Sequence record: MZ475893.1
Direction: 5' to 3' (one strand)
DNA length: 64,000 nucleotides
Part shown: piece by piece, positions 8,379 to 33,666 of the stretch
How positions within the stretch are numbered: position 1 is the first letter of the stretch
Layout: each line of letters opens with the position of its first letter
The notes under the pieces: model-generated
Seen by the model: only the letters and a program-made list of their open reading frames with translations
Databases searched by the model: none
Told to the model about the DNA's origin: nothing
Position numbers and translations under genes: made by a program

Positions 8379-8857
8379 TGGACAAAACAGAGAGCGCAAG
8401 CTCCAATAGCGAAAGGCACCGAATCTATTTCAGGCAGCCGCAACGAGTACCTCCCTTCGATACAGCTTTTGTTCGTGCGTCAGACACCACGAGCCTCAAG
8501 CTGCTTCTCTCGGCTGCTCCTGAACATTGTCAGATCATATTGTTTACGGACGGCACCGGCACTGCTTATGCCATGAAACGCCTCTTTAAGCGCAAATTCC
8601 TTTTGAACTCTCAAGCTCTACAACTCGATCTGCCTACGATAACACTCACGGGTCAGGTCGTTTATCAGTTCGTTCGCGGCGGCTCTGTGCGCGACAAACT
8701 GAGTCGTTACTTCTGTGCTGGACCAAGCTATCTGCATGAGCTGGCACAAACGTCCGTTGAATCAGACGTTCTCGATATGTTCTGTTTGGGCTTAGACTTC
8801 CATACGGTATTGCGTGCGAGGGAGCGTGGCCGTTCTATTGTCTTTACGGAGGAATAA
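8375..8857 (+). CDS. hypothetical protein
   Basis: 160 aa, translationally coupled. Confidence 0.7.
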   Translation: MMDKTESASSNSERHRIYFRQPQRVPPFDTAFVRASDTTSLKLLLSAAPEHCQIILFTDGTGTAYAMKRLFKRKFLLNSQALQLDLPTITLTGQVVYQFVRGGSVRDKLSRYFCAGPSYLHELAQTSVESDVLDMFCLGLDFHTVLRARERGRSIVFTEE

Positions 8858-9885
8858 TGGGAAGAACGTTTGCGTCAGTGACTCGCCACTCACCTGTCGC
8901 TCAAATACCTAAGATGGAAATCAAATACGGTAAGAAGCCTATGCTTCACGTAGTTGATGCATCGAACTGGATGTGTCGTGCTTACTTTGCCACACGCGAT
9001 AAGCCTGTGTATGCATCAGACGGTACGCCCATCTACGGCCTGCGCCAGTTTCTGTATATGGTTCAGGACCTGATTGACATAGCAGCCAAAGACCCTAACG
9101 GTTGCTACATTGCTTTCTGCTTCGACCCAAGCTCAAACGAAACGTGGCGTTATCGTGCTCTGCAAAACTGGGCAGCAACCAAGAAGAAGAAATTCATCAG
9201 AGGCGTGTTCAAGAAAAGCAGCGACTATAAAGGCAACCGAGACCGCTCTCAAACAGCCGAGCTTGGTGTGCAGATGATTTTAGCGCGGCAGATTCTTGAA
9301 CTTGCAGGCTTCTATGTTGGCCTGAAAAAGCCATACGAGTGCGACGACCTTGTAGGAACTATCTGCCATAGATTCAAGCGCAAGTATCTGATCAAACTCT
9401 ACTCACGCGATAAGGACTATGTACAGCTTGTTGATCACAAGAACGTTGAACTCATTATGCAGGCGCAGTCTAACGCAAAAGAACGCCGCTTCGATTTCAA
9501 AACAGCGAAAGGCTTCTTCGGTGTTCCTGCCGACCGTGTTATCGATATGCTCGCGCTGTGCGGTGATGGTGTCGATAACGTTCCAGGCATTCCTGGTATT
9601 GGCGAGAAGACTGCTATTGAACATATTCATCGCCACGGTGGTGCTATTGAACTTCGTGACGCTCTGCTTAATGGCAAAGTGAAATCGAATGCAGGCTGGG
9701 CTAAAGCATTGCGCTCAGAGATTCCTTCGATGGACCTTGAACTCCAGATGGAACTTGTCACTATCTGCCGCAACGTGCCTGGCATGCCTCGCACTATTGA
9801 TGCCTTTGCTAATCGCACGCCCGATGTTAAAGCGCTCAAAGCAGTTAAGAAGCGTCTGGGCCTGACTAAACTATTACACGTATAG
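8857..9885 (+). CDS. 5'-3' exonuclease / flap endonuclease (PolI N-terminal, T4 RNase H / T5 D15 family)
   Basis: VVDASNWMCRAYF, YECDDLVGT, SRDKDYVQLV, LCGDGVDNVPGIPGIGEKTA (H3TH motif). Confidence 0.92.
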   Translation: MGRTFASVTRHSPVAQIPKMEIKYGKKPMLHVVDASNWMCRAYFATRDKPVYASDGTPIYGLRQFLYMVQDLIDIAAKDPNGCYIAFCFDPSSNETWRYRALQNWAATKKKKFIRGVFKKSSDYKGNRDRSQTAELGVQMILARQILELAGFYVGLKKPYECDDLVGTICHRFKRKYLIKLYSRDKDYVQLVDHKNVELIMQAQSNAKERRFDFKTAKGFFGVPADRVIDMLALCGDGVDNVPGIPGIGEKTAIEHIHRHGGAIELRDALLNGKVKSNAGWAKALRSEIPSMDLELQMELVTICRNVPGMPRTIDAFANRTPDVKALKAVKKRLGLTKLLHV

Positions 9886-9892
9886 GAATGAT

Positions 9893-10438
9893 ATGAAACA
9901 TCCTCAGCGCGTTGCTCATTTAGAGCATTGGTTGGAGGCGGGTCGTGCCGCTTTCACCATGGGTGTGCGTACACCAAATAAAGATGGCGTGGATCTGCTT
10001 GCTATTTTCCGTGCTGTGTCTCGTGGTACAAAAGACCAGTGCGCTGCATCAATCAAAAAGCAAACGGCAGAACTGATTGAAGACATTGAACGCGATGTGC
10101 CTGCCTTCAAAGTCATTCGTCGTCGCTTCCGCAAAGAGTTTTATCCGGACTACAACATACCAGCAGAAGTCGAGCTGTATGTTGCGCTTCTGGCCGAAAC
10201 GTTCGGCGACATTGTGCAGACGATGACGTACCTGCACCTTCGTCGCTGTGTCGATACTAAGGACCTGCTGCTTAACTGGCTGCCAAATGGCTATCCAGCT
10301 AAAGACGCTATGGGTCTCCTGTGGAACTTACAGAAAGTGCCTACCGAGAACGAGTTCATGTTCACAGGAAATGCGGTAGACTGCATACAATCTGTAAATG
10401 ACCTATACAACAAAATGTATAAGACAGGAGACAAGTAA
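9893..10438 (+). CDS. hypothetical protein
   Basis: 181 aa, AGGA RBS. Confidence 0.7.
   Translation: MKHPQRVAHLEHWLEAGRAAFTMGVRTPNKDGVDLLAIFRAVSRGTKDQCAASIKKQTAELIEDIERDVPAFKVIRRRFRKEFYPDYNIPAEVELYVALLAETFGDIVQTMTYLHLRRCVDTKDLLLNWLPNGYPAKDAMGLLWNLQKVPTENEFMFTGNAVDCIQSVNDLYNKMYKTGDK
10392..10399 (+). promoter_or_regulatory. CTGTAAAT motif
   Basis: 38 nt before ATG 10438. Confidence 0.5.
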
Positions 10439-12543: not shown

Positions 12544-13314
12544 ATGAGCAATATCGATACCACAATGCCTGAAGGCAAATGGGAGTTCAATGAGTCGGTT
12601 GCTTGCGTGTTTGATAACATGCTGCAAAACTCTATCCCGTCTTATGGCCGTATGCGTGACCTGACGTATCGTCTGGGTCGTCGCTTCGTAACCCCGGGTT
12701 CAGCTATCGTCGATCTCGGTGCTTCACTCGGCCGAGCTATCGAGCCGTTTGCAAAAGAGTTCGGCAAGTATGACTACCATCATGCTGCTGACGCTCCTGG
12801 CGAAGACTACGAAACAGGCAATCACTATAGCCTGTTCGAAGTAGCGCCTGCGATGCGTGAACGTCTGGTGCAGAATGAAGTGCTCAACTCAGTGAATGCC
12901 AAACTGGAAAGTGAATCGCTGGTAGATACTGACACGTTTATGTTCGACGGTCAGGTGCATTGCTCGTTGATTCTGAGTGTGCTAACTCTCCAGTTCACGC
13001 CGATTGAACATCGTCAACACATTCTGGAAAACGTGTACAACTCACTGCAACCAGGCGGCGCATTCATCCTCGTTGAGAAGGTGTTAGGCGATAACAACTA
13101 TCTCGACAAAATGCTGGTGGACACCTACTACCAAATGAAAGGCGGTAACGGTTACAGCGCCGAGTCGATTGCGACTAAACGTAAGTCACTGGAAGGTGTA
13201 CTCGTTCCTGTTAAAGCAGCGTGGAACGAAGAACTGTTGCGTAAAGCAGGCTTCGGTCAGGTAGAAAGTTTCTATCGCGACCTGAACTTCGCAGGATGGA
13301 TTGCTATTAAGTAA
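12544..13314 (+). CDS. cmoA: carboxy-S-adenosyl-L-methionine synthase (CmoA-like)
   Basis: WEFNESVACVFDNMLQNSIPSY, DLGASLG, TLQF, LQPGGAFILVEK, KRKSLEGVL (Arg aligning with E. coli R199), AGF...NF at C-terminus; collinear with E. coli CmoA along its length. Confidence 0.85.
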   Translation: MSNIDTTMPEGKWEFNESVACVFDNMLQNSIPSYGRMRDLTYRLGRRFVTPGSAIVDLGASLGRAIEPFAKEFGKYDYHHAADAPGEDYETGNHYSLFEVAPAMRERLVQNEVLNSVNAKLESESLVDTDTFMFDGQVHCSLILSVLTLQFTPIEHRQHILENVYNSLQPGGAFILVEKVLGDNNYLDKMLVDTYYQMKGGNGYSAESIATKRKSLEGVLVPVKAAWNEELLRKAGFGQVESFYRDLNFAGWIAIK

Positions 13315-13323
13315 GGAAATACT

Positions 13324-14586
13324 ATGAAAGTAAACGGGCGTATCTTAGCTATCGTCCCACACAAGACAATGCAAGACCGTACCAAGTCGGGTGTGGGTTC
13401 GTACATTGATGGACTAGAGGCATACGGCTTCTGCGACTTTATCACGGACGGAGAGAACAGCTCCGTTGCGAAAAGTCAGTGGTTCACTTACGGTGATACT
13501 ACTCTCAGTGACGGTTATAAGATAGGGCATATCCAGAGCGAGTTGCTGATTGCACTTGAGCGCTTGCCTTACCGTGCGATTATTTGCAGCACGTATGAGG
13601 CGATTGAAGCCTGCGTGTCTCTGGGACTGCCAAAGATTATGCCCGTTTACTATCGCACGCACAACAGCTTTTTGCTCACACAAGATCTCAAGGGTCTTGG
13701 TGCAGAGAAGATCCACCGTGCGTTGTTGCAAGCACGCGTCACAGGGCTGCGCATCCTTGCTAACTGTGATTCGACTGCGATCAATCTTGCTGAGCGCTAT
13801 AAGACGCCAGCACACGTTGCCTACAACTCGTTCTCGGTGCCTGACTACAACCCACCAGCTCGGCGTGTTCCCCAGCTGTTGATTATCTGTCGCTATGAGA
13901 AGGTCAAGCGCACGTTGTTTGCTGCGCGTATTGCTGCTGCCTCAGGATTACCCGTTCGTGTTATGACAGGCAGTGATCGTCAAGTACGCAATTGGGAGAA
14001 AGAGCTGGCTGAGGCGGGTGTCAAAGAATACACCGTCGTCAGTGGCCTTAGTGGTAAACAGAAACTCGAATTTATAGGCGCTTGCACAGTAGCCCTTTCT
14101 ACTGCGAGCGTTGAATCTTTTGCTAACGGTGTGCGTGAGTCTATCCCCTACTGTCCTACCTTTATCGTGCAAACATCCAAGTACGATTGGGCTAAGGACT
14201 ATACGCGCTTCTGTACTGCCGACAAGCATGTTCATATCAGAACTGTTGATCGCGTATCGGACCAAGCCGTAGCTGAAATCGGAAGTGAGATAGCGCGAGT
14301 TGCCACCACACGTTATCTGACAGGTCCGCAGCGTAAACAACTACTGACTGCTTGGGCAAAGCAAGTTGATCGTGGTTGGTCCGACTTTGTTCAGAAGGCT
14401 GTTGTTGACGATGACGGCAAGCCGCTGCGCACCGAGCTATATCAAGAACTGATCGACAAATCAGAAATCGATTGGTCACAAACGCCTACGCTAATGCGTA
14501 CTGTAAATGCGTTACATAAATGCCACGCTCGTTTGGGCCTGACATTTGATGGCACTAAAATCAAATATAAGAGGAAGCGCAAATGA
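13324..14586 (+). CDS. GT-B (GT4-like) glycosyltransferase
   Basis: N-terminal SGVGSY, ILANCDSTA, LLIICRYEKVKR, SVESFANGVRESI (cf. ExFGxxxxEA). Confidence 0.7.
   Translation: MKVNGRILAIVPHKTMQDRTKSGVGSYIDGLEAYGFCDFITDGENSSVAKSQWFTYGDTTLSDGYKIGHIQSELLIALERLPYRAIICSTYEAIEACVSLGLPKIMPVYYRTHNSFLLTQDLKGLGAEKIHRALLQARVTGLRILANCDSTAINLAERYKTPAHVAYNSFSVPDYNPPARRVPQLLIICRYEKVKRTLFAARIAAASGLPVRVMTGSDRQVRNWEKELAEAGVKEYTVVSGLSGKQKLEFIGACTVALSTASVESFANGVRESIPYCPTFIVQTSKYDWAKDYTRFCTADKHVHIRTVDRVSDQAVAEIGSEIARVATTRYLTGPQRKQLLTAWAKQVDRGWSDFVQKAVVDDDGKPLRTELYQELIDKSEIDWSQTPTLMRTVNALHKCHARLGLTFDGTKIKYKRKRK
14501..14508 (+). promoter_or_regulatory. CTGTAAAT motif
   Basis: 74 nt before ATG 14583. Confidence 0.4.
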
Positions 14587-15659
14587 GTGTTATCGGTGAT
14601 ATTTATAACATACCACAACCTTTCGCAATGTATGTCGGGAATTGTGAGACGCGTGCTCAAGCCAAAGTTGCTGCTGGTACAATCGAGTGGGCGCCAGAGA
14701 AAGTGTGCTGCACCGTAGATGATGGTAACAACCTGTTCCCCAACGTACCTTCAATCAACCCTGCTGACGTGCATAAGACAGATGCAGAAACTTTAGTGAT
14801 TGGCTGTGCACCTTTCGGCGGCCGCATTGACGAGCACATGGACAAAGCTATTCGTAGCGCTATCTATCGTGGACGCAACATTGCTGCTGCTATGCATACG
14901 CGCCTGGCGGATAATCCCGAATACGTTGAGCTGGCTGATCGCTACAACGTCAAGCTGTATGACTTCCGTCATCGTCCTGATGCGTACCCACTTGGTACCG
15001 GTGAGAAGCGTAGCGGTCTGCGTCTGTTAACTGTCGGTACTGATAGCTCCTGCGGCAAGAAGTTTACCACGCTATCTCTGTATCGTGAACTCAAGCGCAT
15101 CCACGCAGACACTGTGTTTTGCTCTACTGGGCAAACAGGCTTCCTGATTAGCGGTTGCGGTATCAACAACGACACGATTGTTGCTGACTTCCTCGCCGGT
15201 GCTGCTGAATCACTTTCGCCTGCTGGTCCTGCTGATCGTATCTATCTGATTGAAGGTCAAGGTGCTATCACTCACCCAGCATACACAGGCGGTAGCATGA
15301 GTCTGATTGCCGGCTCGCAGCCTGATCATCTCATCCTGTGCCACGCATGGAACCGTCAGAATCAGTTGGGCGTTAAGCGTAAGCCTGACCTTGATTTTGA
15401 GATGCGTGCTAATATTGAAGCGGCGCGTATTCACGGTCTCCACCCGACCTACATCGGTATCAGCATTAACTTCTCTGAGTGTGATTTGACACAGGACGAG
15501 CAAGATAAAATCCTGTACCAACTCGCATCAACGTATGAGATTCCCGTGTTCGACCCATCACAAGACACTTCTGTGTTGCGTGACCTCGCTCGTATGTTAG
15601 CAACTAAAGCCAAAGCAAGGAGCCTCGATGGCCAAGCATCCCCTGCGCAAGCTGTTTGA
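14583..15659 (+). CDS. DUF1611 family protein (P-loop fold; DgcN-like)
   Basis: LVIGCAPFGG, AAAMH, LTVGTDSSCGKKFT, STGQTG, ADFLAGAAE, IEGQGAITHPAY, GSQPDHLILCH. Confidence 0.85.
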   Translation: MSVIGDIYNIPQPFAMYVGNCETRAQAKVAAGTIEWAPEKVCCTVDDGNNLFPNVPSINPADVHKTDAETLVIGCAPFGGRIDEHMDKAIRSAIYRGRNIAAAMHTRLADNPEYVELADRYNVKLYDFRHRPDAYPLGTGEKRSGLRLLTVGTDSSCGKKFTTLSLYRELKRIHADTVFCSTGQTGFLISGCGINNDTIVADFLAGAAESLSPAGPADRIYLIEGQGAITHPAYTGGSMSLIAGSQPDHLILCHAWNRQNQLGVKRKPDLDFEMRANIEAARIHGLHPTYIGISINFSECDLTQDEQDKILYQLASTYEIPVFDPSQDTSVLRDLARMLATKAKARSLDGQASPAQAV

Positions 15660-16503
15660 ACAGCATGTGAAAAAAGAAGTGAAAGCAGACAAGGTAGCTG
15701 TGCTGCTTTCATCTGGCCTCGATGGTTTGGTCAGTGCGTTAGCTGCACACGATCTCGGTAAGAAGGTGCACGCCTTCACTTTCCAAATGGGTGACAACCC
15801 TAGCTTTGACAGTCGCCACGCACAGATTGTTGCGCAGAAGATGGGGTGGGAGTTCACTCTCGTTAAAGTTCCCACCAGCGTGTCTGCTATCGCATTAGCG
15901 TGGCGCGTGCTGCATTCCAAGTATCGCTGCATTAAGAAGCGTGACTACGAGTGTGCGTACCCTATGGTCTATTGCTACAAGGCAATCAAAGACGCTGGGT
16001 ACAAGTATGTGCTAAGCGGGCTGGTGGCCGATGGTTACTTCCTGTATAACCGTAACACGCATATTCAGAAAATCAGCGGGCCACACTCTGACGCTCAGAA
16101 GTATCATGAGTTCCGTACTCAATACTTTAGTCCGTGGCTTAAACACGGTAAGAAGTCTCTGGGCGTTGACGGGTATAACCCGAGCGGCATGTTGCAGCAT
16201 GAGATGTTGTGCGATAACTTCGGCCTGATTCACGTTAACCCGTGGATGCAAAACAAGGTGTTTGACTACTTCATCAAATACACTTGGCAGGAGTTGAATC
16301 AGCCTAAGCAGAAGATGCCACTAACCGAAGCGTGGGCAGAACACATTGCTCTTGTTGGTCATCGTCCACACAGGGGCTATCAGACAGAAGCCAAAGTGCC
16401 TGAATACTTTGAGCATCTGATCGAGAACCCTGAGATTAACTTCAACGGGCGCAAGCGCATCATGGACGTGGCACGCGACTGGTCCAAACGAGAGCCTGAA
16501 TAA
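15628..16503 (+). CDS. asparagine-synthetase-like ATP-dependent amide ligase, synthetase domain only
   Basis: PP-loop VAVLLSSGLDG, HAFTF, VLSGLVADGYF (cf. SGxGADE), NPW...QKMPL; no N-terminal Cys-glutaminase domain. Confidence 0.8.
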   Translation: MAKHPLRKLFEQHVKKEVKADKVAVLLSSGLDGLVSALAAHDLGKKVHAFTFQMGDNPSFDSRHAQIVAQKMGWEFTLVKVPTSVSAIALAWRVLHSKYRCIKKRDYECAYPMVYCYKAIKDAGYKYVLSGLVADGYFLYNRNTHIQKISGPHSDAQKYHEFRTQYFSPWLKHGKKSLGVDGYNPSGMLQHEMLCDNFGLIHVNPWMQNKVFDYFIKYTWQELNQPKQKMPLTEAWAEHIALVGHRPHRGYQTEAKVPEYFEHLIENPEINFNGRKRIMDVARDWSKREPE

Positions 16504-19130: not shown

Positions 19131-19532
19131 ATGAGACCTGAAAACATTTCACGCACCTATCGCGTCGGTCAGTCTGACCTGGAGAAAGCACACAATGTCT
19201 GCGGAGAGAACAATGTAACACTCTCAGATGTGGTGCGCAGATACATCGAAAGAATCGTACTGACTGAGGGTGAGTTCCTTATGAACGAGCGTAAGCACGT
19301 ACCTGAGCCCCAACTGAATGTACGCCTGCCCTTTTATATTGCGCACTCCTTTGCATCTGTGTGTAAGTCTCGTGGTACGTTAGCCTCTAAAACCATTCTC
19401 AACTTTGTCAAGAATATTGCTCTTTCCGGGACTATCCCTGAGGAGTTAAAGTATGCTTCTGACGCAGAGTTGCGTGCCTATATTACCTCAGAGCGCTCTC
19501 GCCTCGATGCACTGGAAGCAAAACTCAAATGA
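19131..19532 (+). CDS. putative tandem ribbon-helix-helix regulator
   Basis: RTYRV...TLSDVVRRYIERI and LNVRL...ASKTILNFV, two RelB-like RHH patterns. Confidence 0.5.
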   Translation: MRPENISRTYRVGQSDLEKAHNVCGENNVTLSDVVRRYIERIVLTEGEFLMNERKHVPEPQLNVRLPFYIAHSFASVCKSRGTLASKTILNFVKNIALSGTIPEELKYASDAELRAYITSERSRLDALEAKLK

Positions 19533-20368
19533 TTCTAACTAGTCCCATTCGCTATCAGGGTAACAAGCGCACTCTGATGCCTCTTATTCTCGAACATGCG
19601 CCTGTGAAGGATTGCGTTCGCATGATAGACGCATTCGGTGGTAGTGGTACTGTTGCGCTCAACATGCCTCACAAGTTTCGCATCTACAATGAACTGAGCA
19701 CGCCTGTGTTTGAGATCGTCCAGTTGCTTGCGCATCAAGACCCGAAGAAAACATTGGGTCAGATTAAGCGCATCGTCAAGCGTTTTTGTCTAACCAATAG
19801 CAGCCAAGACAACTACGACATGTTCCGCGCGTATGTTCAGAAGAAGCCGAGTCCGTTGTTCCATTACATCGCACACAGGCACGCACGCTCTAACATGCTG
19901 CGCTTCAACCAGAAAGGCATCTACAACGTGCCGTTCGGTGAGCGTGGCCTGATTGGAAAGTTCGATCAGCTTGAGCAGGAGCTGGTGCAGTTCCATGAAC
20001 GTATGCAGAACACGCACATCACCAACATGCGCTATAACCTGTTGCTCAAGTCTGTGTCAAAGCATATCGGACCGAACACGTTCATTTACTTTGACCCTCC
20101 ATATCTTGCTAGTGGTGCAATGCAATACGGTAAGTGGACTGAGCACAACGAACGCAACCTGCTGTCCGTACTTGAGTATCTGAATCGTCAAGGCTGCCCG
20201 TGGATGTTGAGCAACGTTCTCCAACATCGGCACCACACGAACGACCTGCTCAAGCGCTGGCTAAAGAAACACGCAACGACTGTCATCTATCCTGACAAGT
20301 CTTATTCAATGGCCAACTCTCATTCTGATAGTCACAGCACTATCGAGATTCTGGCAATGAACTACTGA
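19529..20368 (+). CDS. dam: DNA adenine methyltransferase (Dam/D12 class)
   Basis: RYQGNK, DAFGGSGTV, RFNQKGIYNVPFG, YFDPPY. Confidence 0.92.
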   Translation: MILTSPIRYQGNKRTLMPLILEHAPVKDCVRMIDAFGGSGTVALNMPHKFRIYNELSTPVFEIVQLLAHQDPKKTLGQIKRIVKRFCLTNSSQDNYDMFRAYVQKKPSPLFHYIAHRHARSNMLRFNQKGIYNVPFGERGLIGKFDQLEQELVQFHERMQNTHITNMRYNLLLKSVSKHIGPNTFIYFDPPYLASGAMQYGKWTEHNERNLLSVLEYLNRQGCPWMLSNVLQHRHHTNDLLKRWLKKHATTVIYPDKSYSMANSHSDSHSTIEILAMNY

Positions 20369-20375
20369 GGTACAA

Positions 20376-20762
20376 ATGGTCAAACAGTATTGTGCCGATA
20401 AGTACGAGGGGGATCTCGAGGGTCACCCTGTTGTGCTGCTGCTATCGTTTAAGATAGGTGGCCCTACGCCTATGCGAATCTCAGGACGTGACCTGTATCG
20501 CTATCTGGGCATAAGCAAGAACTACAGTAGCTGGGTAAACGACTCTATTGCCGACTGCGGTCTTGTCGAGAACTCGGACTATGTGATTGAGTGGTTCAAG
20601 TCAGATGCAAATGGTCATTCGATAGAACACAAATTCACACAGCACGCCGCCATTGAGATTGCAATGCGCGGACGGAGTGTATTGTCTAAACGTATTCGTC
20701 GATCTGTGTGTCGTCGAGATGGCTTCATTCGATTTGTAGGAGAACATAATGAACAAGATTGA
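20376..20762 (+). CDS. AntA/AntB antirepressor-family DNA-binding protein
   Basis: ISGRDLYRYLGI...YSSW...ENSDY...AAIEIAM. Confidence 0.7.
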   Translation: MVKQYCADKYEGDLEGHPVVLLLSFKIGGPTPMRISGRDLYRYLGISKNYSSWVNDSIADCGLVENSDYVIEWFKSDANGHSIEHKFTQHAAIEIAMRGRSVLSKRIRRSVCRRDGFIRFVGEHNEQD

Positions 20763-27730: not shown

Positions 27731-28831
27731 ATGACAGGTCCTCTCGATCTCACTAACCCACAGCACTTCGAACTGTACTCGCTGCACAGTGTTGATGCAC
27801 AGTATATCAATCTGTGTGACGCACTCCTAACGCAGGGTACGCACGAATCTGACCCAGAGCGCACTGACGATACGTGGCATACGCTGATCGGTATTGGCTT
27901 CCAGTTGTCTAACACCAACATCGCTTTCCCTGCGCTGCTGTCTAAGCGTGTCAACGTCCGTGCAGCTATCGATGAATCCTGCTGGTTCGCACGCGGTGAA
28001 ACGAACATCGCAACTCTCGGTTCTAAAATCTGGAACGAGTGGGCAGATGAAGAAGGTGAGAACGGTCCTATCTACGGCTTCCAGTACCGTAACTGGCCTG
28101 ACATTAAAGTGTTCAACACTGTCGAAGGCATGATTGAGCAGCACATCCCACCAGCGATGATTGAGCGCATCTCGAAAGAGATTAACCGCATGAAGGCGCA
28201 GGGCTATATCGAAACTGCGTTGCCTGACGGTCGCGTGTTGTACGAAGGCTATATCGATCAGTACGCTGATGCACTGCGTCAAATCATGGCGCGTAGTCGT
28301 AGCCGCCGCATTCGTGTGCAAGCGTTCAACCCAGGTTACGTTGGTATGCAGAGCCTGCCGCCGTGTCATACCGAGTTTGAGTTCAACGTGACCAAAGCCA
28401 CTGCGTATGAGATTGCGCAGATGGAAGCACGCTCAATGCGCCCTGACGCTGACTCACTGCATATCGTGGTGACGATGCGCAGCAATGACGCGCTATTGGG
28501 CAGGCCCTTCAATATCGTGGGCTACAGCGCCATGCACCAGTTGTTTGCGAAGTGGGCTGGTCTGAACGTTGGTTCGTTTACTCTGAACGTGACCAATATG
28601 CACATGTACGATCACCACCGCGAAGCGTATGCACAACAGCGTGAGCAGTGGCTGGAGCTACAGACGCAGATGCAGACGACAGGCAAACCTGTTGTTTACC
28701 CTACCCTCGAAATCACTGACGACATTCTGGGCCTGACGCCAGAAGAGCTGCTGGATAACGTCAACGTCGATTGGTTCGAGCTGGTGGACTACTCTCCTAA
28801 ACCTGCTGTTAAAGGACGCGTAACCAAATGA
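27731..28831 (+). CDS. thyA: thymidylate synthase
   Basis: LLSKRV, IWNEWAD, GPIYGFQYR, SRRI, LPPCH, RSNDALLGRPFN, NMHMYDHH. Confidence 0.93.
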   Translation: MTGPLDLTNPQHFELYSLHSVDAQYINLCDALLTQGTHESDPERTDDTWHTLIGIGFQLSNTNIAFPALLSKRVNVRAAIDESCWFARGETNIATLGSKIWNEWADEEGENGPIYGFQYRNWPDIKVFNTVEGMIEQHIPPAMIERISKEINRMKAQGYIETALPDGRVLYEGYIDQYADALRQIMARSRSRRIRVQAFNPGYVGMQSLPPCHTEFEFNVTKATAYEIAQMEARSMRPDADSLHIVVTMRSNDALLGRPFNIVGYSAMHQLFAKWAGLNVGSFTLNVTNMHMYDHHREAYAQQREQWLELQTQMQTTGKPVVYPTLEITDDILGLTPEELLDNVNVDWFELVDYSPKPAVKGRVTK

Positions 28832-30830: not shown

Positions 30831-31529
30831 ATGGCAAAAATTGCTAAAGCAAAGGAAGGGAAAAAGAAAAGCAACCCTATGTTGATTGACCTGAAAAAGT
30901 TCAAGTCAGTTAAACAGCTTAAGGGTGCGAAGTACAACCCTCGTTTCATTACAGACAGCCGACTGAGAGCGCTCGAAGGTTCTTTGGGCAGCTTCGGTGA
31001 TTTGTCTGGCGTGGTGTTCAACAACAGCGTAGACAGTGGCGTGCTGATCTCAGGCCACCAGCGTCTCAAGTCGATTGAGAAGTGGGACTCGCGCATTGAG
31101 ATTCAGCAAACGTCTGACAAGTACGGCACGGTAGCGCTGGGTTATATCCATGCCACCAGCGCCAAAGGTAAAACGATCAGCATCCCACTGCGTATCGTTA
31201 ACTGGTCAGATAAGAAAGTGGAGTTTGCTGCTAACATTGCTGCGAATGCCCACGGCGGTGAGTTCGATAACAAAAAGCTCGCGTCACTTGTCGAGAAGCT
31301 GGACCTGACTACAATCAAGCCAGCACTTATCGGGCTTGACCCGTTAGAGATTCGCGGCCTGCAACAGACGCTGAGCAAACAAGCTATCGTCGAGCAGGAA
31401 AAGCGTGTTGGTAAAACAACAGGCAAAATGAACGGCAGCACCGGCGAGTTCAAAGAGTACACGACTGATGAAGTTGGTACTGCGCTGACCTGCACCTGCC
31501 CACGTTGTGGCTTTAAGTTCGAGGGATAA
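30831..31529 (+). CDS. ParB/sulfiredoxin-like N-terminal domain protein with C-terminal CPxCG
   Basis: YNPRFI, LISGHQRL, NAHGGEFD, CTCPRCGFKF. Confidence 0.75.
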   Translation: MAKIAKAKEGKKKSNPMLIDLKKFKSVKQLKGAKYNPRFITDSRLRALEGSLGSFGDLSGVVFNNSVDSGVLISGHQRLKSIEKWDSRIEIQQTSDKYGTVALGYIHATSAKGKTISIPLRIVNWSDKKVEFAANIAANAHGGEFDNKKLASLVEKLDLTTIKPALIGLDPLEIRGLQQTLSKQAIVEQEKRVGKTTGKMNGSTGEFKEYTTDEVGTALTCTCPRCGFKFEG

Positions 31530-31530
31530 C

Positions 31531-33666
31531 ATGATCATCAAGCCGCCTACAATGAAAGAGATTAATAAGCTGCCCAAGCCTTGGTCAGGTATGAGTTTCT
31601 TTGCAGGTTGCGGTGGTTCATCTACCGGTCACAAGATGGCCGGTATTAACATCCTACTGAGCAACGAGTTCGTGGACGCGGCTCGTGAATCGTATGAAGC
31701 GAACCATCCAACAACCAAAGTGTTGCCCCACGATATTCGTCGTCTTGACCCGAAAAAGCTGCTTAGCTATTGCGGCCTGAGCCAAGGCGAACTGGACTTG
31801 CTTGACGGCAGTCCTCCGTGCTTTACCGAAGACACGTTCATTCATACTGACACTGGTATGAAGTTCATCACTGATATGCGCATCGGTGACTTCGCTATGA
31901 CCTCTGTTGGTAAGTATCATCCTGTGTATGACACGATGGTGCGCCCGTATGACGGTCAGATGCACAGAATTGAAACGCTGCTCGGTCAGAACAATGCAAC
32001 ACCTGAGCATCCATTCTTTGTTCGTCGTCAGAATGAAGAAACTGGCGGGTACAGTGAGCCGTTCTGGTGTGACGCTAAAGATGTGCAGGAAGGCGATTTG
32101 TTGGGTACGCCTCGTGTTACGCCTGACATGGGTGAAGCACACACGCATGAGATTATCTCGTCGTTGACTGCGCAGCTTGTGCGTTGGATTGCATTGCCTG
32201 AGTTTTGGTGGCTGATTGGTCACTGGTGCAATCGCGGTGCAATCGATAAGATTCGTGGTGTCGATGTTATTCAGTTCACCTCGATGACAGCGATGGAAAA
32301 CTCGCTGGTGGAACAAGCGTTCGACGTGCTCAAGTTAAGCAGCATCAACAGCGCTTCGTCCGACATGGGCGTTCACCGTAAGACCGTCCGTGTTGTTATG
32401 GACACAGACCTGTTGCTGTTCTTGCGTATGTTTATCGCACAGGGCAAGAAGTCTATGTCCCGCCGTATGCCAGGCATGATCTTCCATCTGGCCAAAGAGC
32501 TGAAACAGCAATTCATTCTCGGCTATCTGGGTCGTGATTACGTCACAGCAATGGGCGTTGGTCATGCGTTAGAGGCTGACTCAAAGCGCTTCCTCGTTGA
32601 GATGAATTACCTGTGCTGCTCTGCGTTCAACAGACCGCTGTTCGATGCAATGTTGTTCACTGACTTGCATTACGGCAGTCCTATGTTACCGCCGAGTCGC
32701 TTCATCACCAAAGAGCACATTGGCTTCCTGTTCTTACAAGAAGAGGTTAATTTCTTCTTTGAGTTCGAGCCGGAAGACCCGCATCTGTGGGTAGAAGTGA
32801 TTGAGAACTTTACGCACCATGAAACGTGCAACGTCTACAACTTCTCAGTCAGTGTTGATGAGACGTATGTTGCTAACGGTATGGTCGTGCATAACTGCAA
32901 AGGGTTCTCGACTGCGGGTGTGAAAGAAGACGGCTGGGGCAAAGAGGTTAAGTACAGCGGCAACAAGTATCAGCAAGTCGATGACCTGTTCGATCAGTAT
33001 TGCCGTATGCTCAAGCACATGCAGCCTAAAACGTTCACTGCGGAAAACGTTAGTGGCCTCGTTAAAGGTGCGTCGAAGGGTTACTTCATTGAAATCATGA
33101 AGACCTTTGATCAGCTAGGCTACTATGTGCGAGCACCGTTGCTTAATGCTGCGTGGCTCGGTGTGCCTCAGTCGCGTGAGCGTATCATCTTTATGGGTGT
33201 GCGCAAAGACGTGGCTAAAGCACTCGGCTATAAGACTGCGTTGACTGCTGTGCCTGATGTAACACCTCAATCAAGCATGGCGTTCCTTGCAGATGCACTG
33301 CCGAACATTCGTCGGTATAAAGGTACGGAGCGTGACATTATCAAGTATCTGCCTGCTGTTAACGGGCCGATGCCTACGATTACCGCTGCTGACGCTATCG
33401 CATACGAAACAGCACGCTTCTCCTCTGCTGGCTTCATTGAAGACGACAAAGGGCACAGACGCAAGCTGACGATTGACGAACTCAAAGTTGTATCAGGCAT
33501 GCCTAGTGATTACGTGCTCACAGGTAAGTTTGAAGAACAATGGGAACGTCTCGGTCGTGTGTGCGTACCTGCAATGACGTGTGCAGCGGCAAGCGCGTTG
33601 ATACGCCATGTGCTTGAGCCGTACGCGAAGCTGCGTAAAAAGAAACCTGGGGATCGTTTTCGTTAA
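31531..33666 (+). CDS. C5-cytosine DNA methyltransferase family enzyme, intein-containing; candidate carboxymethyltransferase
   Basis: FFAGCGG (I), NEF (II), DIRRL (III), GSPP-intein-CKGFS (IV), ENVSGL (VI), QSRERI (VIII), RKLTIDE (IX), LGRVCVP (X, Asn replaced by Arg). Confidence 0.9.
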   Translation: MIIKPPTMKEINKLPKPWSGMSFFAGCGGSSTGHKMAGINILLSNEFVDAARESYEANHPTTKVLPHDIRRLDPKKLLSYCGLSQGELDLLDGSPPCFTEDTFIHTDTGMKFITDMRIGDFAMTSVGKYHPVYDTMVRPYDGQMHRIETLLGQNNATPEHPFFVRRQNEETGGYSEPFWCDAKDVQEGDLLGTPRVTPDMGEAHTHEIISSLTAQLVRWIALPEFWWLIGHWCNRGAIDKIRGVDVIQFTSMTAMENSLVEQAFDVLKLSSINSASSDMGVHRKTVRVVMDTDLLLFLRMFIAQGKKSMSRRMPGMIFHLAKELKQQFILGYLGRDYVTAMGVGHALEADSKRFLVEMNYLCCSAFNRPLFDAMLFTDLHYGSPMLPPSRFITKEHIGFLFLQEEVNFFFEFEPEDPHLWVEVIENFTHHETCNVYNFSVSVDETYVANGMVVHNCKGFSTAGVKEDGWGKEVKYSGNKYQQVDDLFDQYCRMLKHMQPKTFTAENVSGLVKGASKGYFIEIMKTFDQLGYYVRAPLLNAAWLGVPQSRERIIFMGVRKDVAKALGYKTALTAVPDVTPQSSMAFLADALPNIRRYKGTERDIIKYLPAVNGPMPTITAADAIAYETARFSSAGFIEDDKGHRRKLTIDELKVVSGMPSDYVLTGKFEEQWERLGRVCVPAMTCAAASALIRHVLEPYAKLRKKKPGDRFR
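31819..32895 (+). mobile_element. intein (359 aa) in catalytic PC motif, degenerate LAGLIDADG region
   Basis: Starts CFTEDTFI, block B ATPEHPFF, remnant WLIGHWCNRG and FILGYLGRD, ends YNFSV...VANGMVVHN followed by +1 Cys. Confidence 0.92.

What the first reader, a model, noticed from the sequence alone, without database searches (positions are those of the whole stretch)
13324..16503. Unusual tailoring trio: glycosyltransferase + DUF1611 + glutaminase-less amide ligase
Seen: three overlapping, translationally coupled genes after cmoA. The Asn-synthetase-like protein (291 aa) has the PP-loop SSGLDG and SGLVADG but no Ntn glutaminase domain. Known: such enzymes adenylate a carboxylate and couple it to an amine; a DUF1611 member (DgcN) has been described as a D-glutamate N-acetyltransferase; GT-B enzymes glycosylate modified phage bases. 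Inference: the ligase joins an external amine (amino acid, polyamine or amino sugar) to a carboxymethyl base, and DUF1611 or the GT prepares or caps it. An alternative target is glycosylation of the many virion fibre proteins.
Basis: partly seen in the sequence, partly recalled or inferred. Interest (0 to 1): 0.8.

Follow-up and report, generated by a model that had tools for sequence, protein, structure and literature searches.

The report
Extended carboxymethylcytosine DNA hypermodification cassette
These three phage genes, the cmoA gene before them and an intein-interrupted DNA-methylase-like gene 15 kb away look like an enlarged version of a pathway described in 2025 that puts a carboxymethyl group on cytosine in phage DNA and builds on it, here probably with a D-amino acid and a sugar, which would be an undescribed DNA base.

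Summary
The window is the first 64 kb of Erwinia jumbo phage pEa_SNUABM_45. Four tightly packed genes, three of them overlapping or RBS-coupled, encode a CmoA-like Cx-SAM synthase, a 420-aa GT-B glycosyltransferase (shown only by structure prediction and relatives), a DUF1611/DgcN-like protein and a glutaminase-less PP-loop ligase.

The ligase is a full-length homologue of the characterised SpCmoY (33% identity). The window also encodes a CmoX-type C5 enzyme whose best solved relative is SpCmoX. It keeps the diagnostic Arg and is interrupted by an intein just before its catalytic Cys.

The two extra genes are new. In 13 of 14 contexts examined, DUF1611 sits directly upstream of a CmoY-type ligase. 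This GT clade always sits directly upstream of DUF1611 (6 lineages). Four lineages insert an alanine-racemase-type gene between DUF1611 and the ligase, and others add DAHP synthase or chorismate mutase.

Best reading: a 5cxmC amide with a D-amino-acid-derived side chain, then glycosylated. The exact chemistry is inferred, not shown. Verdict: a new variant of a known kind.

The parts
12544..13314 (+). CmoA-like carboxy-SAM (Cx-SAM) synthase, first gene of the operon
   Evidence: TIGR00740 1.2e-39 (136 bits, cut-off 193). PDB 4gek/1im8 at 4e-28 and 4e-26. 28% identity to the experimentally active SpCmoA, E 3e-25. PHROG 4752.
13324..14586 (+). GT-B (GT4-like, EX7E-type) glycosyltransferase. Basic protein (pI 9.3). 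An optional add-on of the cassette.
   Evidence: No direct family hit. 97 distant relatives, several with weak PF00534/PF13439 hits. Invariant G23, H113, K195, K247 and E264, with near-invariant R190 and E272, in alignment A1. AF2 pLDDT 90.9, pTM 0.88. Foldseek top hits are SenB, GlgM, tll1591, HepE, TarM, BshA, GtfA and SdgB. Always directly upstream of DUF1611 in 6 lineages.
14583..15659 (+). DUF1611 / DgcN-like two-domain protein (Rossmann-like N domain plus P-loop-like C domain). Cys180/Tyr221 subtype.
   Evidence: PF17396 5.7e-18 and PF07755 1.4e-46. NF041892 DgcN 285 bits, below the 480 cut-off. PDB 7xrj at 6.8e-50. 57 columns shared with all relatives, and two clade-specific switches, R180C and D221Y. 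Directly upstream of a CmoY-type ligase in 13 of 14 contexts examined.
15628..16503 (+). CmoY-type AMP-forming amide ligase (Asn-synthetase-like PP-loop domain, no glutaminase domain). 'Type 1' subtype.
   Evidence: PF00733 1.7e-13 on the N-terminal part only. tblastn to Synechococcus phage S-B43 CmoY 2e-32. Full-length BLASTP 33% identity, E 6e-50. S28, G30 and D32 of the PP-loop are invariant across 12 ligases. There is a type-1-specific insertion of about 20 aa.
31507..33666 (+). CmoX-type DNA cytosine-C5 carboxymethyltransferase precursor carrying an intein. The start codon is uncertain: GTG at 31507 or a downstream ATG.
   Evidence: PF00145 6.3e-38 plus Intein_splicing/Hint_2. The best PDB hit is 8yf3 (SpCmoX) at 1.8e-54, against HaeIII at 1e-16. 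It aligns in three pieces, and the GR of SpCmoX R350 is conserved.
31819..32895 (+). Intein domain (359 aa) inside CmoX, inserted between GSPP and the catalytic Cys
   Evidence: It starts C-F-T-E-D-T and ends V-V-H-N, followed by C-K-G-F-S-T-A-G. PF14890 1.8e-08 and PF13403 on this piece alone. An intein lies at the same place in the CmoX of metagenomic contig L011.

Best explanation
The three genes are the tailoring part of a Cx-SAM-dependent cytosine hypermodification system. (1) CmoA (12544-13314) converts SAM plus prephenate to carboxy-SAM. This is inferred from homology to assayed enzymes. (2) The intein-containing CmoX (31507-33666), once spliced, transfers the carboxymethyl group to C5 of cytosines in phage DNA, giving 5cxmC. 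This is inferred from the best solved relative and the Arg signature. (3) The 291-aa PP-loop ligase adenylates the 5cxmC carboxylate and forms an amide with an amine. This is inferred from full-length homology to SpCmoY. (4) The amine is probably a D-amino acid or a derivative of one. The DUF1611/DgcN-like protein, whose cellular relatives N-acylate D-glutamate, is the component that selects or processes that D-amino-acid moiety. It may act as the acyl-acceptor partner of the ligase, since a 5cxmC amide is formally an N-(substituted acetyl)-amino acid, like the DgcN product. Alternatively it may N-acylate a second amine. This step rests on neighbourhood and family inference and is the weakest one. 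(5) The basic GT-B enzyme then transfers a sugar from an NDP-sugar to the appended side chain on the DNA, as an optional terminal decoration. The expected outcome is bulky, restriction-resistant cytosines. My sub-claim probabilities are: ligase acts on 5cxmC DNA about 0.8; DUF1611 and GT belong to the same pathway about 0.7; a D-amino acid is involved about 0.45; the GT glycosylates the DNA-borne side chain about 0.45.
For: All three published core components are present: CmoA, CmoX with GSPP|C and the R350 equivalent, and CmoY. Their functions were shown experimentally in Synechococcus phage S-B43 (PMC12783734). Neighbourhood: DUF1611 lies immediately upstream of a CmoY-type ligase in 13 of 14 contexts, with shuffled positions of CmoA and CmoX. 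The contexts are the window, the AD1/Alexandra group, the SNUABM_3 group, L008, L010/11, L012, L013, L014, L015/L026, the P0137 contig, L027, L028 and L029. The one cellular context, L016, pairs it with an MR_MLE racemase and passes the DgcN cut-off. The GT lies directly upstream of DUF1611 in 6 lineages, down to 29% GT identity, and once directly after CmoX. An alanine-racemase-family gene sits between DUF1611 and the ligase in 4 lineages. Its PLP-Lys and catalytic Tyr are invariant, and its profile hits 45 solved Alr-family racemases. Prephenate-supply genes occur inside cassettes: DAHP synthase in L008 (TIGR00034 180 bits, cut-off 173) and chorismate mutase in L028. The DUF1611 subtype co-varies with the ligase subtype: C180/Y221 with type-1 ligases, R180/D221 with type-2-like ligases. 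GT and ligase are basic in every lineage (pI 8.9-9.4), while CmoA, DUF1611 and the racemase are acidic. GT structural neighbours include enzymes that glycosylate Ser residues or small hydroxy acids, namely SdgB, GtfA and BshA.
Against: There are no chemical data on this phage's DNA, and no paper in the library reports its modification or restriction resistance. SpCmoY needs no partner to ligate glycine, so a requirement for DUF1611 is not explained. If the amino acid is joined through its alpha-amine, a DgcN-type N-acetylation has no obvious amine left. The window itself has no racemase, so the D-amino-acid inference is borrowed from sister cassettes. The DUF1611 protein fails the DgcN equivalog cut-off (285 against 480), and two otherwise near-universal residues are changed, so its activity may differ. 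The subtype co-variation may reflect a single evolutionary event. The pI argument is weak, because SpCmoY is acidic (5.8) yet acts on DNA. The GT's donor and acceptor are unknown, and GT-B enzymes are versatile.
Confidence: 0.6

Rival explanations
1. Capping model. The ligase attaches a side chain that still carries a free amine, such as a diamino acid, polyamine or amino sugar. DUF1611 then acts as an acetyl-CoA-dependent N-acetyltransferase that caps this amine, with the GT acting before or after. This differs from the best explanation only in the role of DUF1611.
For: The closest named family is 'N-acetyltransferase DgcN'. 57 core columns, including the GTDxxxGKK, TGQTG, EGQG and C253 positions, are shared with cellular relatives. 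The racemase profile also hits solved lysine and broad-specificity racemases. From memory, the combination of a GT4 enzyme, an ATP-dependent ligase and an acetyltransferase mirrors the logic of mycothiol biosynthesis.
Against: DUF1611 occurs in many cassettes without any GT, so it cannot be dedicated to an amino sugar. The best racemase matches are alanine, DadX and serine racemases. There is no direct evidence for a diamino substrate.
Confidence: 0.2
2. Passenger model. Only CmoA, CmoX and the ligase act on DNA, making a simple amide as in S-B43. DUF1611 and the GT serve other ends, for example glycosylation of virion fibres or manipulation of host D-amino-acid or peptidoglycan metabolism.
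For: SpCmoY works alone. These are 'hairy' myoviruses with many fibres (PMC6143709). Cellular DgcN relatives act on free D-Glu. DUF1611 is acidic, like small-molecule enzymes.
Against: Strict adjacency and order (GT, DUF1611, optional racemase, ligase) are kept across at least 13 divergent contigs in which the rest of the neighbourhood differs. This includes compact cassettes CmoX-GT-DUF1611-ligase-CmoA and CmoX-DUF1611-ligase-CmoA. The GT clade was never seen outside this context. Coupling by overlapping stop and start codons is shown.
Confidence: 0.12
3. Soluble-metabolite model. The cassette (GT4 enzyme, ligase, acyltransferase, with or without racemase) makes a free glyco-amino-acid compound rather than decorating DNA, and CmoA supplies Cx-SAM for a small-molecule carboxymethylation.
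For: The GT's structural neighbours BshA, SenB and GlgM act on small molecules. The paper notes that Cx-SAM is used in bacterial natural-product biosynthesis.
Against: A CmoX-type DNA C5 enzyme is present in the window and inside many cassettes. The ligase's only characterised relative acts on DNA. GT and ligase are consistently basic.
Confidence: 0.05
4. RNA model. The genes modify tRNA or another RNA, which is the canonical use of CmoA (annotated 'tRNA methyltransferase' in RefSeq), not DNA.
For: RefSeq and PHROG annotate the CmoA homologue as a tRNA methyltransferase.
Against: The partner transferase is a DNA C5-methylase homologue whose best solved relative is the DNA carboxymethyltransferase SpCmoX. 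The S-B43 system was shown to act on DNA. I did not specifically search the window for a CmoB homologue.
Confidence: 0.03

Closest known systems
CmoA-CmoX-CmoY system of Synechococcus phage S-B43 (5cxmC and 5-glycylcarboxymethylcytosine; Yang et al., Nat Commun 2025, PMC12783734)
   Same: All three components have homologues here. CmoA is 28% identical. CmoX's best PDB hit is 8yf3, with GSPP|C and the R350 equivalent. CmoY is 33% identical over its full length, with the same glutaminase-less architecture. The proposed logic is the same: install a carboxyl handle, then form an amide.
   Different: Two extra genes lie between CmoA and CmoY (GT-B and DUF1611), and the paper mentions neither. The ligase is a distinct subtype with an SSGLDG PP-loop and an insertion of about 20 aa. 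CmoX is 15 kb away and carries an intein at the catalytic Cys. Sister cassettes add a racemase, DAHP synthase or chorismate mutase. The amine is probably not glycine.
DgcN-DgcA D-glutamate catabolic pathway (NCBIfam NF041892; Yu et al., ISME J 2023, cited in PMC12363236; the paper is not held in the library)
   Same: Same two-domain DUF1611 architecture. 57 shared conserved columns. PDB 7xrj at 6.8e-50. Both are linked to D-amino acids: cells pair it with an N-acyl-amino-acid racemase, and phages with an Alr-type racemase.
   Different: It scores 285 against a cut-off of 480. It has no MR_MLE partner and pairs with an adenylating ligase instead. Arg180 and Asp221 are replaced by Cys and Tyr in this clade. 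The context is DNA modification, not catabolism.
GT-B DNA glycosyltransferases of T-even-like phages (glucosylation of 5-hydroxymethylcytosine)
   Same: A phage-encoded GT-B enzyme, proposed to decorate a modified cytosine after replication. A cyanophage protein annotated 'DNA alpha-GT' is among the structural neighbours (rank 17).
   Different: There is no sequence homology, and the closest structures are cellular GT4-like enzymes. The acceptor would be a side chain built on a carboxymethyl-amide handle, not a hydroxymethyl group. The window shows no sign of an hmC pathway: the thymidylate-synthase homologue passes the ThyA model.
Retaining GT4-family glycosyltransferases acting on Ser residues or small hydroxy acids (SdgB, GtfA, BshA, TarM, SenB)
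   Same: Same fold. An EX7E-type pair (E264/E272), R190/K195 and an N-terminal Gly-rich loop.
   Different: 9-16% identity only. There is an extra C-terminal segment of about 90 aa that is very basic (pI 9.8). Donor and acceptor are unknown.
Asparagine synthetase B and related PP-loop amide synthetases
   Same: N-terminal part of the synthetase domain with a PP-loop (PF00733, TIGR01536). The chemistry is adenylation of a carboxylate followed by attack of an amine.
   Different: There is no Ntn glutaminase domain. Only about 130 residues match the profile. The carboxylate substrate is a DNA base, by homology to SpCmoY.

Membership tests
Cmo (5cxmC) DNA hypermodification system (Yang et al. 2025) | Phage-encoded CmoA homologue (Cx-SAM synthase) | tested here: met
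   TIGR00740 136 bits (below the equivalog cut-off of 193, as for the other phage CmoAs, which score 134-155). 4gek at 4e-28. 28% identity to the assayed SpCmoA.
Cmo (5cxmC) DNA hypermodification system (Yang et al. 2025) | C5-MTase homologue with the SPPC motif and the Arg equivalent to SpCmoX R350 | tested here: met
   The best PDB hit is 8yf3 at 1.8e-54. E346, R347, G349 and R350 are invariant in alignment A4. GSPP and the catalytic Cys are both present but separated by an intein.
Cmo (5cxmC) DNA hypermodification system (Yang et al. 2025) | AMP-forming Asn-synthetase-like ligase (CmoY) in the same genome or neighbourhood | tested here: met
   33% identity over the full length to SpCmoY, E 6e-50. 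It lies in the same operon as CmoA.
Cmo (5cxmC) DNA hypermodification system (Yang et al. 2025) | 5cxmC or an amide of it present in virion DNA | not testable with these tools
   No chemical data exist for this phage group in the library.
Glycine-specific CmoY cluster (SpCmoY orthologues) | Same SSN cluster (threshold about 1e-56, about 30% identity) and pocket residues that bind the glycine carboxylate | tested here: inconclusive
   The pairwise E of 6e-50 at 33% identity is borderline. The pocket residues are given only in a figure. The type-1 ligases differ by an insertion of about 20 aa, an SSGLDG loop and an HRPHRGYQTE block where SpCmoY has other residues.
DgcN (NF041892 equivalog, D-glutamate N-acetyltransferase) | Score at or above the curated cut-off (480 bits) | tested here: not met
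   285 bits. Other phage-cassette members score 255-355. A cellular member with an MR_MLE neighbour scores 480.7.
DgcN (NF041892 equivalog, D-glutamate N-acetyltransferase) | DUF1611_N + DUF1611_C architecture with the conserved core | tested here: met
   Pfam 5.7e-18 and 1.4e-46. 57 columns are at least 90% conserved in both groups.
DgcN (NF041892 equivalog, D-glutamate N-acetyltransferase) | Genomic partner DgcA (enolase-superfamily N-acyl-amino-acid racemase) | tested here: not met
   No MR_MLE gene is present in any phage cassette. The partner is the ligase, with or without an Alr-type racemase. The cellular context L016 does have MR_MLE.
DgcN (NF041892 equivalog, D-glutamate N-acetyltransferase) | Acetyl-CoA-dependent N-acetylation of D-Glu | not testable with these tools
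   Arg180 and Asp221, near-universal in relatives (62/65 and 64/65), are Cys and Tyr here. This argues for altered specificity.
GT-B fold, GT4-like retaining glycosyltransferases | Two Rossmann-like domains (GT-B fold) | tested here: met
   AF2 pLDDT 90.9. 227 PDB matches at E<=0.001, and the top 50 are all GT-B enzymes.
GT-B fold, GT4-like retaining glycosyltransferases | EX7E-type acidic pair and basic phosphate-binding residues in the C-terminal domain | tested here: met
   E264 is invariant and E272 near-invariant. K195 is invariant and R190 near-invariant in 32 sequences.
GT-B fold, GT4-like retaining glycosyltransferases | Pfam Glycos_transf_1 (PF00534) at the gathering threshold | tested here: not met
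   The window protein has no hit. Relatives reach 16-32 bits against a cut-off of 26.4.
GT-B fold, GT4-like retaining glycosyltransferases | NDP-sugar donor and identity of the acceptor | not testable with these tools
   The acceptor is inferred from context only.

The most novel reading that the evidence does not exclude
The DNA of this phage group carries a cytosine of a kind not yet described: 5-carboxymethylcytosine amide-linked to a D-amino acid (D-Ala/D-Ser-like) and, in the GT-bearing phages, O-glycosylated. This would be the first D-amino acid and the first 'glyco-amino-acid' appended to DNA. On this reading the DgcN/DUF1611 family has been recruited as a widespread fourth component of Cmo systems, working with the adenylating ligase to form or process the amide.
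Probability: 0.35. Interest if true: 0.8.

Novelty: new variant of a known kind. Interest (0 to 1): 0.62.

Why it matters
The 5cxmC pathway was described only in December 2025, with one characterised amide (glycine). Its authors noted that other ligase clusters probably use unknown amines. This locus, and the roughly 13 related cassettes found here, show that many Cmo systems carry a conserved fourth gene (DUF1611/DgcN-like). A subset adds a racemase, a dedicated GT-B enzyme and prephenate-supply genes. That points to a graded series of heavier cytosine adducts in cultured, readily available Erwinia and Dickeya jumbo phages. The natural variants form a ready comparison set: CmoA-ligase; plus DUF1611; plus GT; plus racemase. 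The result would assign a second biological role to a poorly understood enzyme family. It would extend DNA glycosylation beyond hydroxymethyl handles. It could also explain restriction or defence evasion in phages now being developed for fire-blight biocontrol. In addition, new amide ligases and glycosyltransferases that act on DNA could be useful tools.

Tried and rejected
(1) The annotated 'DNA methyltransferase' at 19529-20368 was tested as the CmoX candidate and rejected. It is a D12-class N6-adenine enzyme whose closest structure is T4 Dam (1yfj, 7e-33).

(2) Direct family and structure-sequence searches with the 420-aa protein found nothing. Only the all-vs-all HMMER search and structure prediction identified it.

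(3) The thymidylate-synthase homologue (27731-28831) was considered as a possible hydroxymethylase that could give the GT an hmC/hmU handle. It passes the ThyA model (TIGR03284 126 bits, cut-off 108), so I treat it as an ordinary TS with an insertion.

(4) The DgcN paper (PMC10030869) is not held. A bare 'DgcN' text search returned only machine-learning papers. The residues that bind glycine in SpCmoY appear only in a figure, so the ligase pocket could not be compared.

(5) The promoter/terminator scan of 11-18 kb was uninformative, with counts at or below those of shuffled sequence.

(6) The IMG/VR scan for DUF1611 relatives returned mostly the same isolates. Logan and ENA contigs were more useful.

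(7) Net charge (pI) as a proxy for DNA binding is suggestive but not decisive, because SpCmoY is acidic.

(8) No paper in the library reports DNA modification or restriction resistance for this phage group.

(9) The intein was not removed in any query. The CmoX pieces were compared separately.

(10) Slip, reported as required: while reasoning I recalled from memory a few short family consensus motifs and residue numbers (PP-loop, alanine-racemase PLP site, a GT4 example, E. coli CmoA). Every motif cited in this report is one displayed by a tool.

Full report
**Identity of the window.** Bases 12544-16503 are 100% identical to Erwinia phage pEa_SNUABM_45, _46 and _14 at the same coordinates, and 96-97% identical to six further isolates. 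These are about 264-kb jumbo myoviruses of Erwinia amylovora, genus Snuvirus. In GenBank the four genes are 'hypothetical protein'. RefSeq calls the first a 'tRNA methyltransferase'.

**Observation.**
- cmoA ends at 13314, and the next ATG is at 13324 behind an AAGGA.
- The 420-aa and 358-aa genes share an ATGA overlap.
- The 358-aa and 291-aa genes overlap by 32 nt, with AAGGAG before the ATG.
- The 256-aa protein is CmoA-like: TIGR00740 136 bits, 4gek at 4e-28.
- The 358-aa protein is DUF1611_N + DUF1611_C and DgcN-like.
- The 291-aa protein matches only the PP-loop part of asparagine synthetase and has no glutaminase domain.
- The quoted SSGLDG and SGLVADG are there.

An exhaustive HMMER search found 97 relatives, only about 14 of them close. 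Several of these hit Glycos_transf_1/Glyco_transf_4 weakly. A 32-sequence alignment shows invariant G23, H113, K195, K247 and E264, and near-invariant R190 and E272, that is, an EX7E-type pair. The AF2 model is confident (pLDDT 90.9, pTM 0.88). Its PDB neighbours are all GT-B/GT4-like enzymes: SenB, GlgM, tll1591, HepE, TarM, BshA, GtfA, SdgB. Viral neighbours are generic phage GT1 proteins, including one annotated as a DNA alpha-GT. The label is therefore right.

**What is already known.** A literature search found Yang et al., Nat Commun, December 2025 (PMC12783734). In Synechococcus phage S-B43, a phage CmoA makes Cx-SAM. A C5-methylase homologue, CmoX (PDB 8YF3), carboxymethylates cytosine in DNA; its Arg350 binds the carboxymethyl group. 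A glutaminase-less asparagine-synthetase homologue, CmoY, then ligates glycine to 5cxmC using ATP. The authors found thousands of CmoX/CmoA/ligase contigs and noted ligase clusters with unknown amines. The paper does not mention DUF1611, glycosyltransferases, racemases, Erwinia or Dickeya. No later paper in the library does either.

**Are the core parts here?** Yes.
- The ligase is the closest non-Erwinia match to S-B43 CmoY (tblastn 2e-32). It aligns end to end with it at 33% identity, E 6e-50.
- CmoA is 28% identical to SpCmoA.
- The nearby methylase at 19529-20368 is a T4-Dam-type adenine enzyme, so I searched further.
- The 719-aa ORF at 31507-33666 is a C5-methylase (PF00145). Its best solved relative by far is SpCmoX (8yf3, 1.8e-54, against HaeIII at 1e-16). 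The Gly-Arg that aligns with SpCmoX R350 is conserved.
- This ORF is interrupted by a 359-aa intein (31819-32895). The N-extein ends GSPP, the intein starts with Cys and ends His-Asn, and the next residue is the Cys that aligns with the catalytic Cys of SpCmoX. I compared the pieces separately and did not join them.

**Do the two extra genes belong to the pathway?** This rests on comparative context. Within this phage group the same genomic slot holds a graded series:

| Phages | Gene order in the slot |
|---|---|
| Y3, SNUABM_5 | CmoA-ligase |
| AD1, Alexandra, SNUABM_22/_33 | CmoA-DUF1611-ligase |
| Window phage | CmoA-GT-DUF1611-ligase |
| SNUABM_3/_1/_17 and one UViG | CmoA-GT-DUF1611-racemase-ligase |

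Unrelated metagenomic phage-like contigs repeat the pattern with other gene orders:

| Contig | Gene order |
|---|---|
| L008 | CmoA-x-GT-DUF1611-racemase-ligase-DAHP synthase |
| L010/L011 | CmoX(with intein)-GT-DUF1611-ligase-CmoA |
| L012 | DUF1611-ligase |
| L013 | DUF1611-racemase-ligase |
| L014 | GT-DUF1611-racemase-ligase |
| L015, L026, L029 | CmoX-DUF1611-ligase-CmoA |
| P0137 contig | CmoX-CmoA-DUF1611-ligase |
| L027 | CmoX-DUF1611-ligase-CmoA-x-PALP enzyme |
| L028 | CmoX-x-chorismate mutase-CmoA-DUF1611-ligase |

A GT relative only 29% identical is again followed by a DUF1611 gene (L030). Thirteen of the 14 DUF1611 contexts I examined are of this kind. The single cellular one pairs DUF1611 with an enolase-type racemase and just passes the DgcN cut-off. 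The order GT, DUF1611, optional racemase, ligase is invariant, while CmoA and CmoX move around. This is strong evidence for one functional module and against the fibre-glycosylation alternative. DAHP synthase (TIGR00034 180 bits, cut-off 173) and chorismate mutase feed prephenate, the co-substrate of CmoA. Their presence independently supports the Cx-SAM reading.

**What chemistry?** The racemase-like proteins belong to the alanine-racemase family. Their profile hits 45 solved racemases: alanine, DadX, VanT serine, histidine, lysine and broad-specificity. The PLP-lysine and the Tyr of the GYG motif are invariant. A PLP racemase acts on free amino acids, so a free D-amino acid is a substrate of the module. 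Phages without the racemase, such as the window phage, could draw on the host's D-Ala and D-Glu pools; this is inference.

DUF1611's named relatives N-acylate D-glutamate. The phage proteins keep 57 core columns shared with cellular relatives. The Erwinia-type clade has replaced two nearly universal residues, Arg180 (62/65) and Asp221 (64/65), with Cys and Tyr. That clade is the one that goes with 'type-1' ligases (SSGLDG loop, insertion of about 20 aa, distinct C-terminal block), and it is the only one seen with the GT and the racemase. DUF1611 proteins that keep Arg/Asp go with type-2-like ligases. This co-variation suggests that the two enzymes see the same amino-acid moiety, and that the type-1 clade has shifted away from an acidic side chain. 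It may, however, reflect a single evolutionary event.

A 5cxmC amide is formally an N-(substituted acetyl)-amino acid, the same core as the DgcN product. My preferred guess is therefore that DUF1611 supplies D-amino-acid acceptor specificity to the ligase-activated carboxymethyl group. The main rival is acetyl-capping of a second amine.

GT and ligase are basic in every lineage (pI 8.9-9.4), while CmoA, DUF1611 and the racemase are acidic. That fits DNA-acting against small-molecule-acting roles, but only weakly. The GT's neighbours include Ser-O-glycosylating enzymes and a hydroxy-acid glycosyltransferase. That would fit a hydroxyl-bearing side chain such as D-Ser, but this is speculation.

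**Comparison and verdict.** The locus is a member of the Cmo system by every sequence feature I could test. It is not a DgcN equivalog (285 against 480 bits; no DgcA partner). The GT is GT-B/GT4-like by fold and motif but falls below Pfam thresholds. What remains new is the extended cassette, which predicts a heavier, possibly D-amino-acid- and sugar-bearing cytosine. I rate it a new variant of a known kind, interest 0.62. The decisive evidence would be the chemical structure of the modified nucleosides in the four natural architectures.

Noticed in passing
window 31819-32895 (inside 31507-33666): A 359-aa class-1-type intein (Cys1 ... His-Asn, then Cys+1) is inserted exactly between GSPP and the catalytic Cys of the CmoX-type enzyme. 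The catalytic nucleophile therefore doubles as the +1 splicing residue. An intein at the same place occurs in the CmoX of an unrelated metagenomic contig (L011:6611-8842), while S-B43, L015, L026 and L027-L029 lack it.
   Followed up: partly
window 19529-20368: T4-Dam-like N6-adenine DNA methyltransferase (PF02086 2e-25; PDB 1yfj 7e-33). It is a second, independent DNA modification enzyme and not the cytosine enzyme.
   Followed up: yes
L004:4324-5259; L008:11103-12068; L013:9055-10038; L014:9052-9954; L022:11032-11976: Divergent alanine-racemase-family proteins (300-327 aa, PLP-Lys and catalytic Tyr retained) are inserted between DUF1611 and the ligase in four phage lineages. The window phage lacks this gene.
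   Followed up: yes
L008:12943-13806; L028:2622-3089: Shikimate-pathway genes lie inside cmo cassettes: a DAHP synthase (passes TIGR00034) and a chorismate mutase (PF01817). They presumably boost prephenate for Cx-SAM synthesis, a point the 2025 paper raised as an open question.
   Followed up: partly
L027:7058-8035: A PALP-family (PF00291) PLP enzyme lies two genes after CmoA in a CmoX-DUF1611-ligase-CmoA cassette. It may make or alter the amine substrate.
   Followed up: no
L005:4095-4733 (Erwinia phage Y3): A 2OG-Fe(II) oxygenase lies two genes downstream of the CmoA-ligase pair in Y3, which lacks DUF1611 and the GT. It may be another tailoring variant, for example hydroxylation of the appended group.
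   Followed up: no
window 27731-28831: A thymidylate-synthase homologue of 366 aa, about 100 aa longer than the 264-aa profile because of an internal insertion. It passes the ThyA model TIGR03284.
   Followed up: partly
window 8857-9885; 20376-20762; 19131-19532: A 5'-3' exonuclease (FEN-type; PF02739 and PF01367), an AntA/AntB antirepressor-domain protein, and a small protein with weak RelB-antitoxin similarity flank the region.
   Followed up: no
L015:4328-5803 and 8458-10304: The metagenomic phage contig carrying a CmoX-DUF1611-ligase-CmoA cassette has inteins in two other genes, one of them RecA-like with a LAGLIDADG domain. Intein-rich genomes seem common among these phages.
   Followed up: no
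PMC6143709, Table 5 (Dickeya phages): In 2018 the authors listed the methyltransferase (CmoA), asparagine synthase, DNA-cytosine methyltransferase and a radical SAM protein as present in both AD1 and Y3 but absent from JA11. This presence/absence pattern fits a single accessory modification module. The radical SAM gene was not examined here.
   Followed up: no
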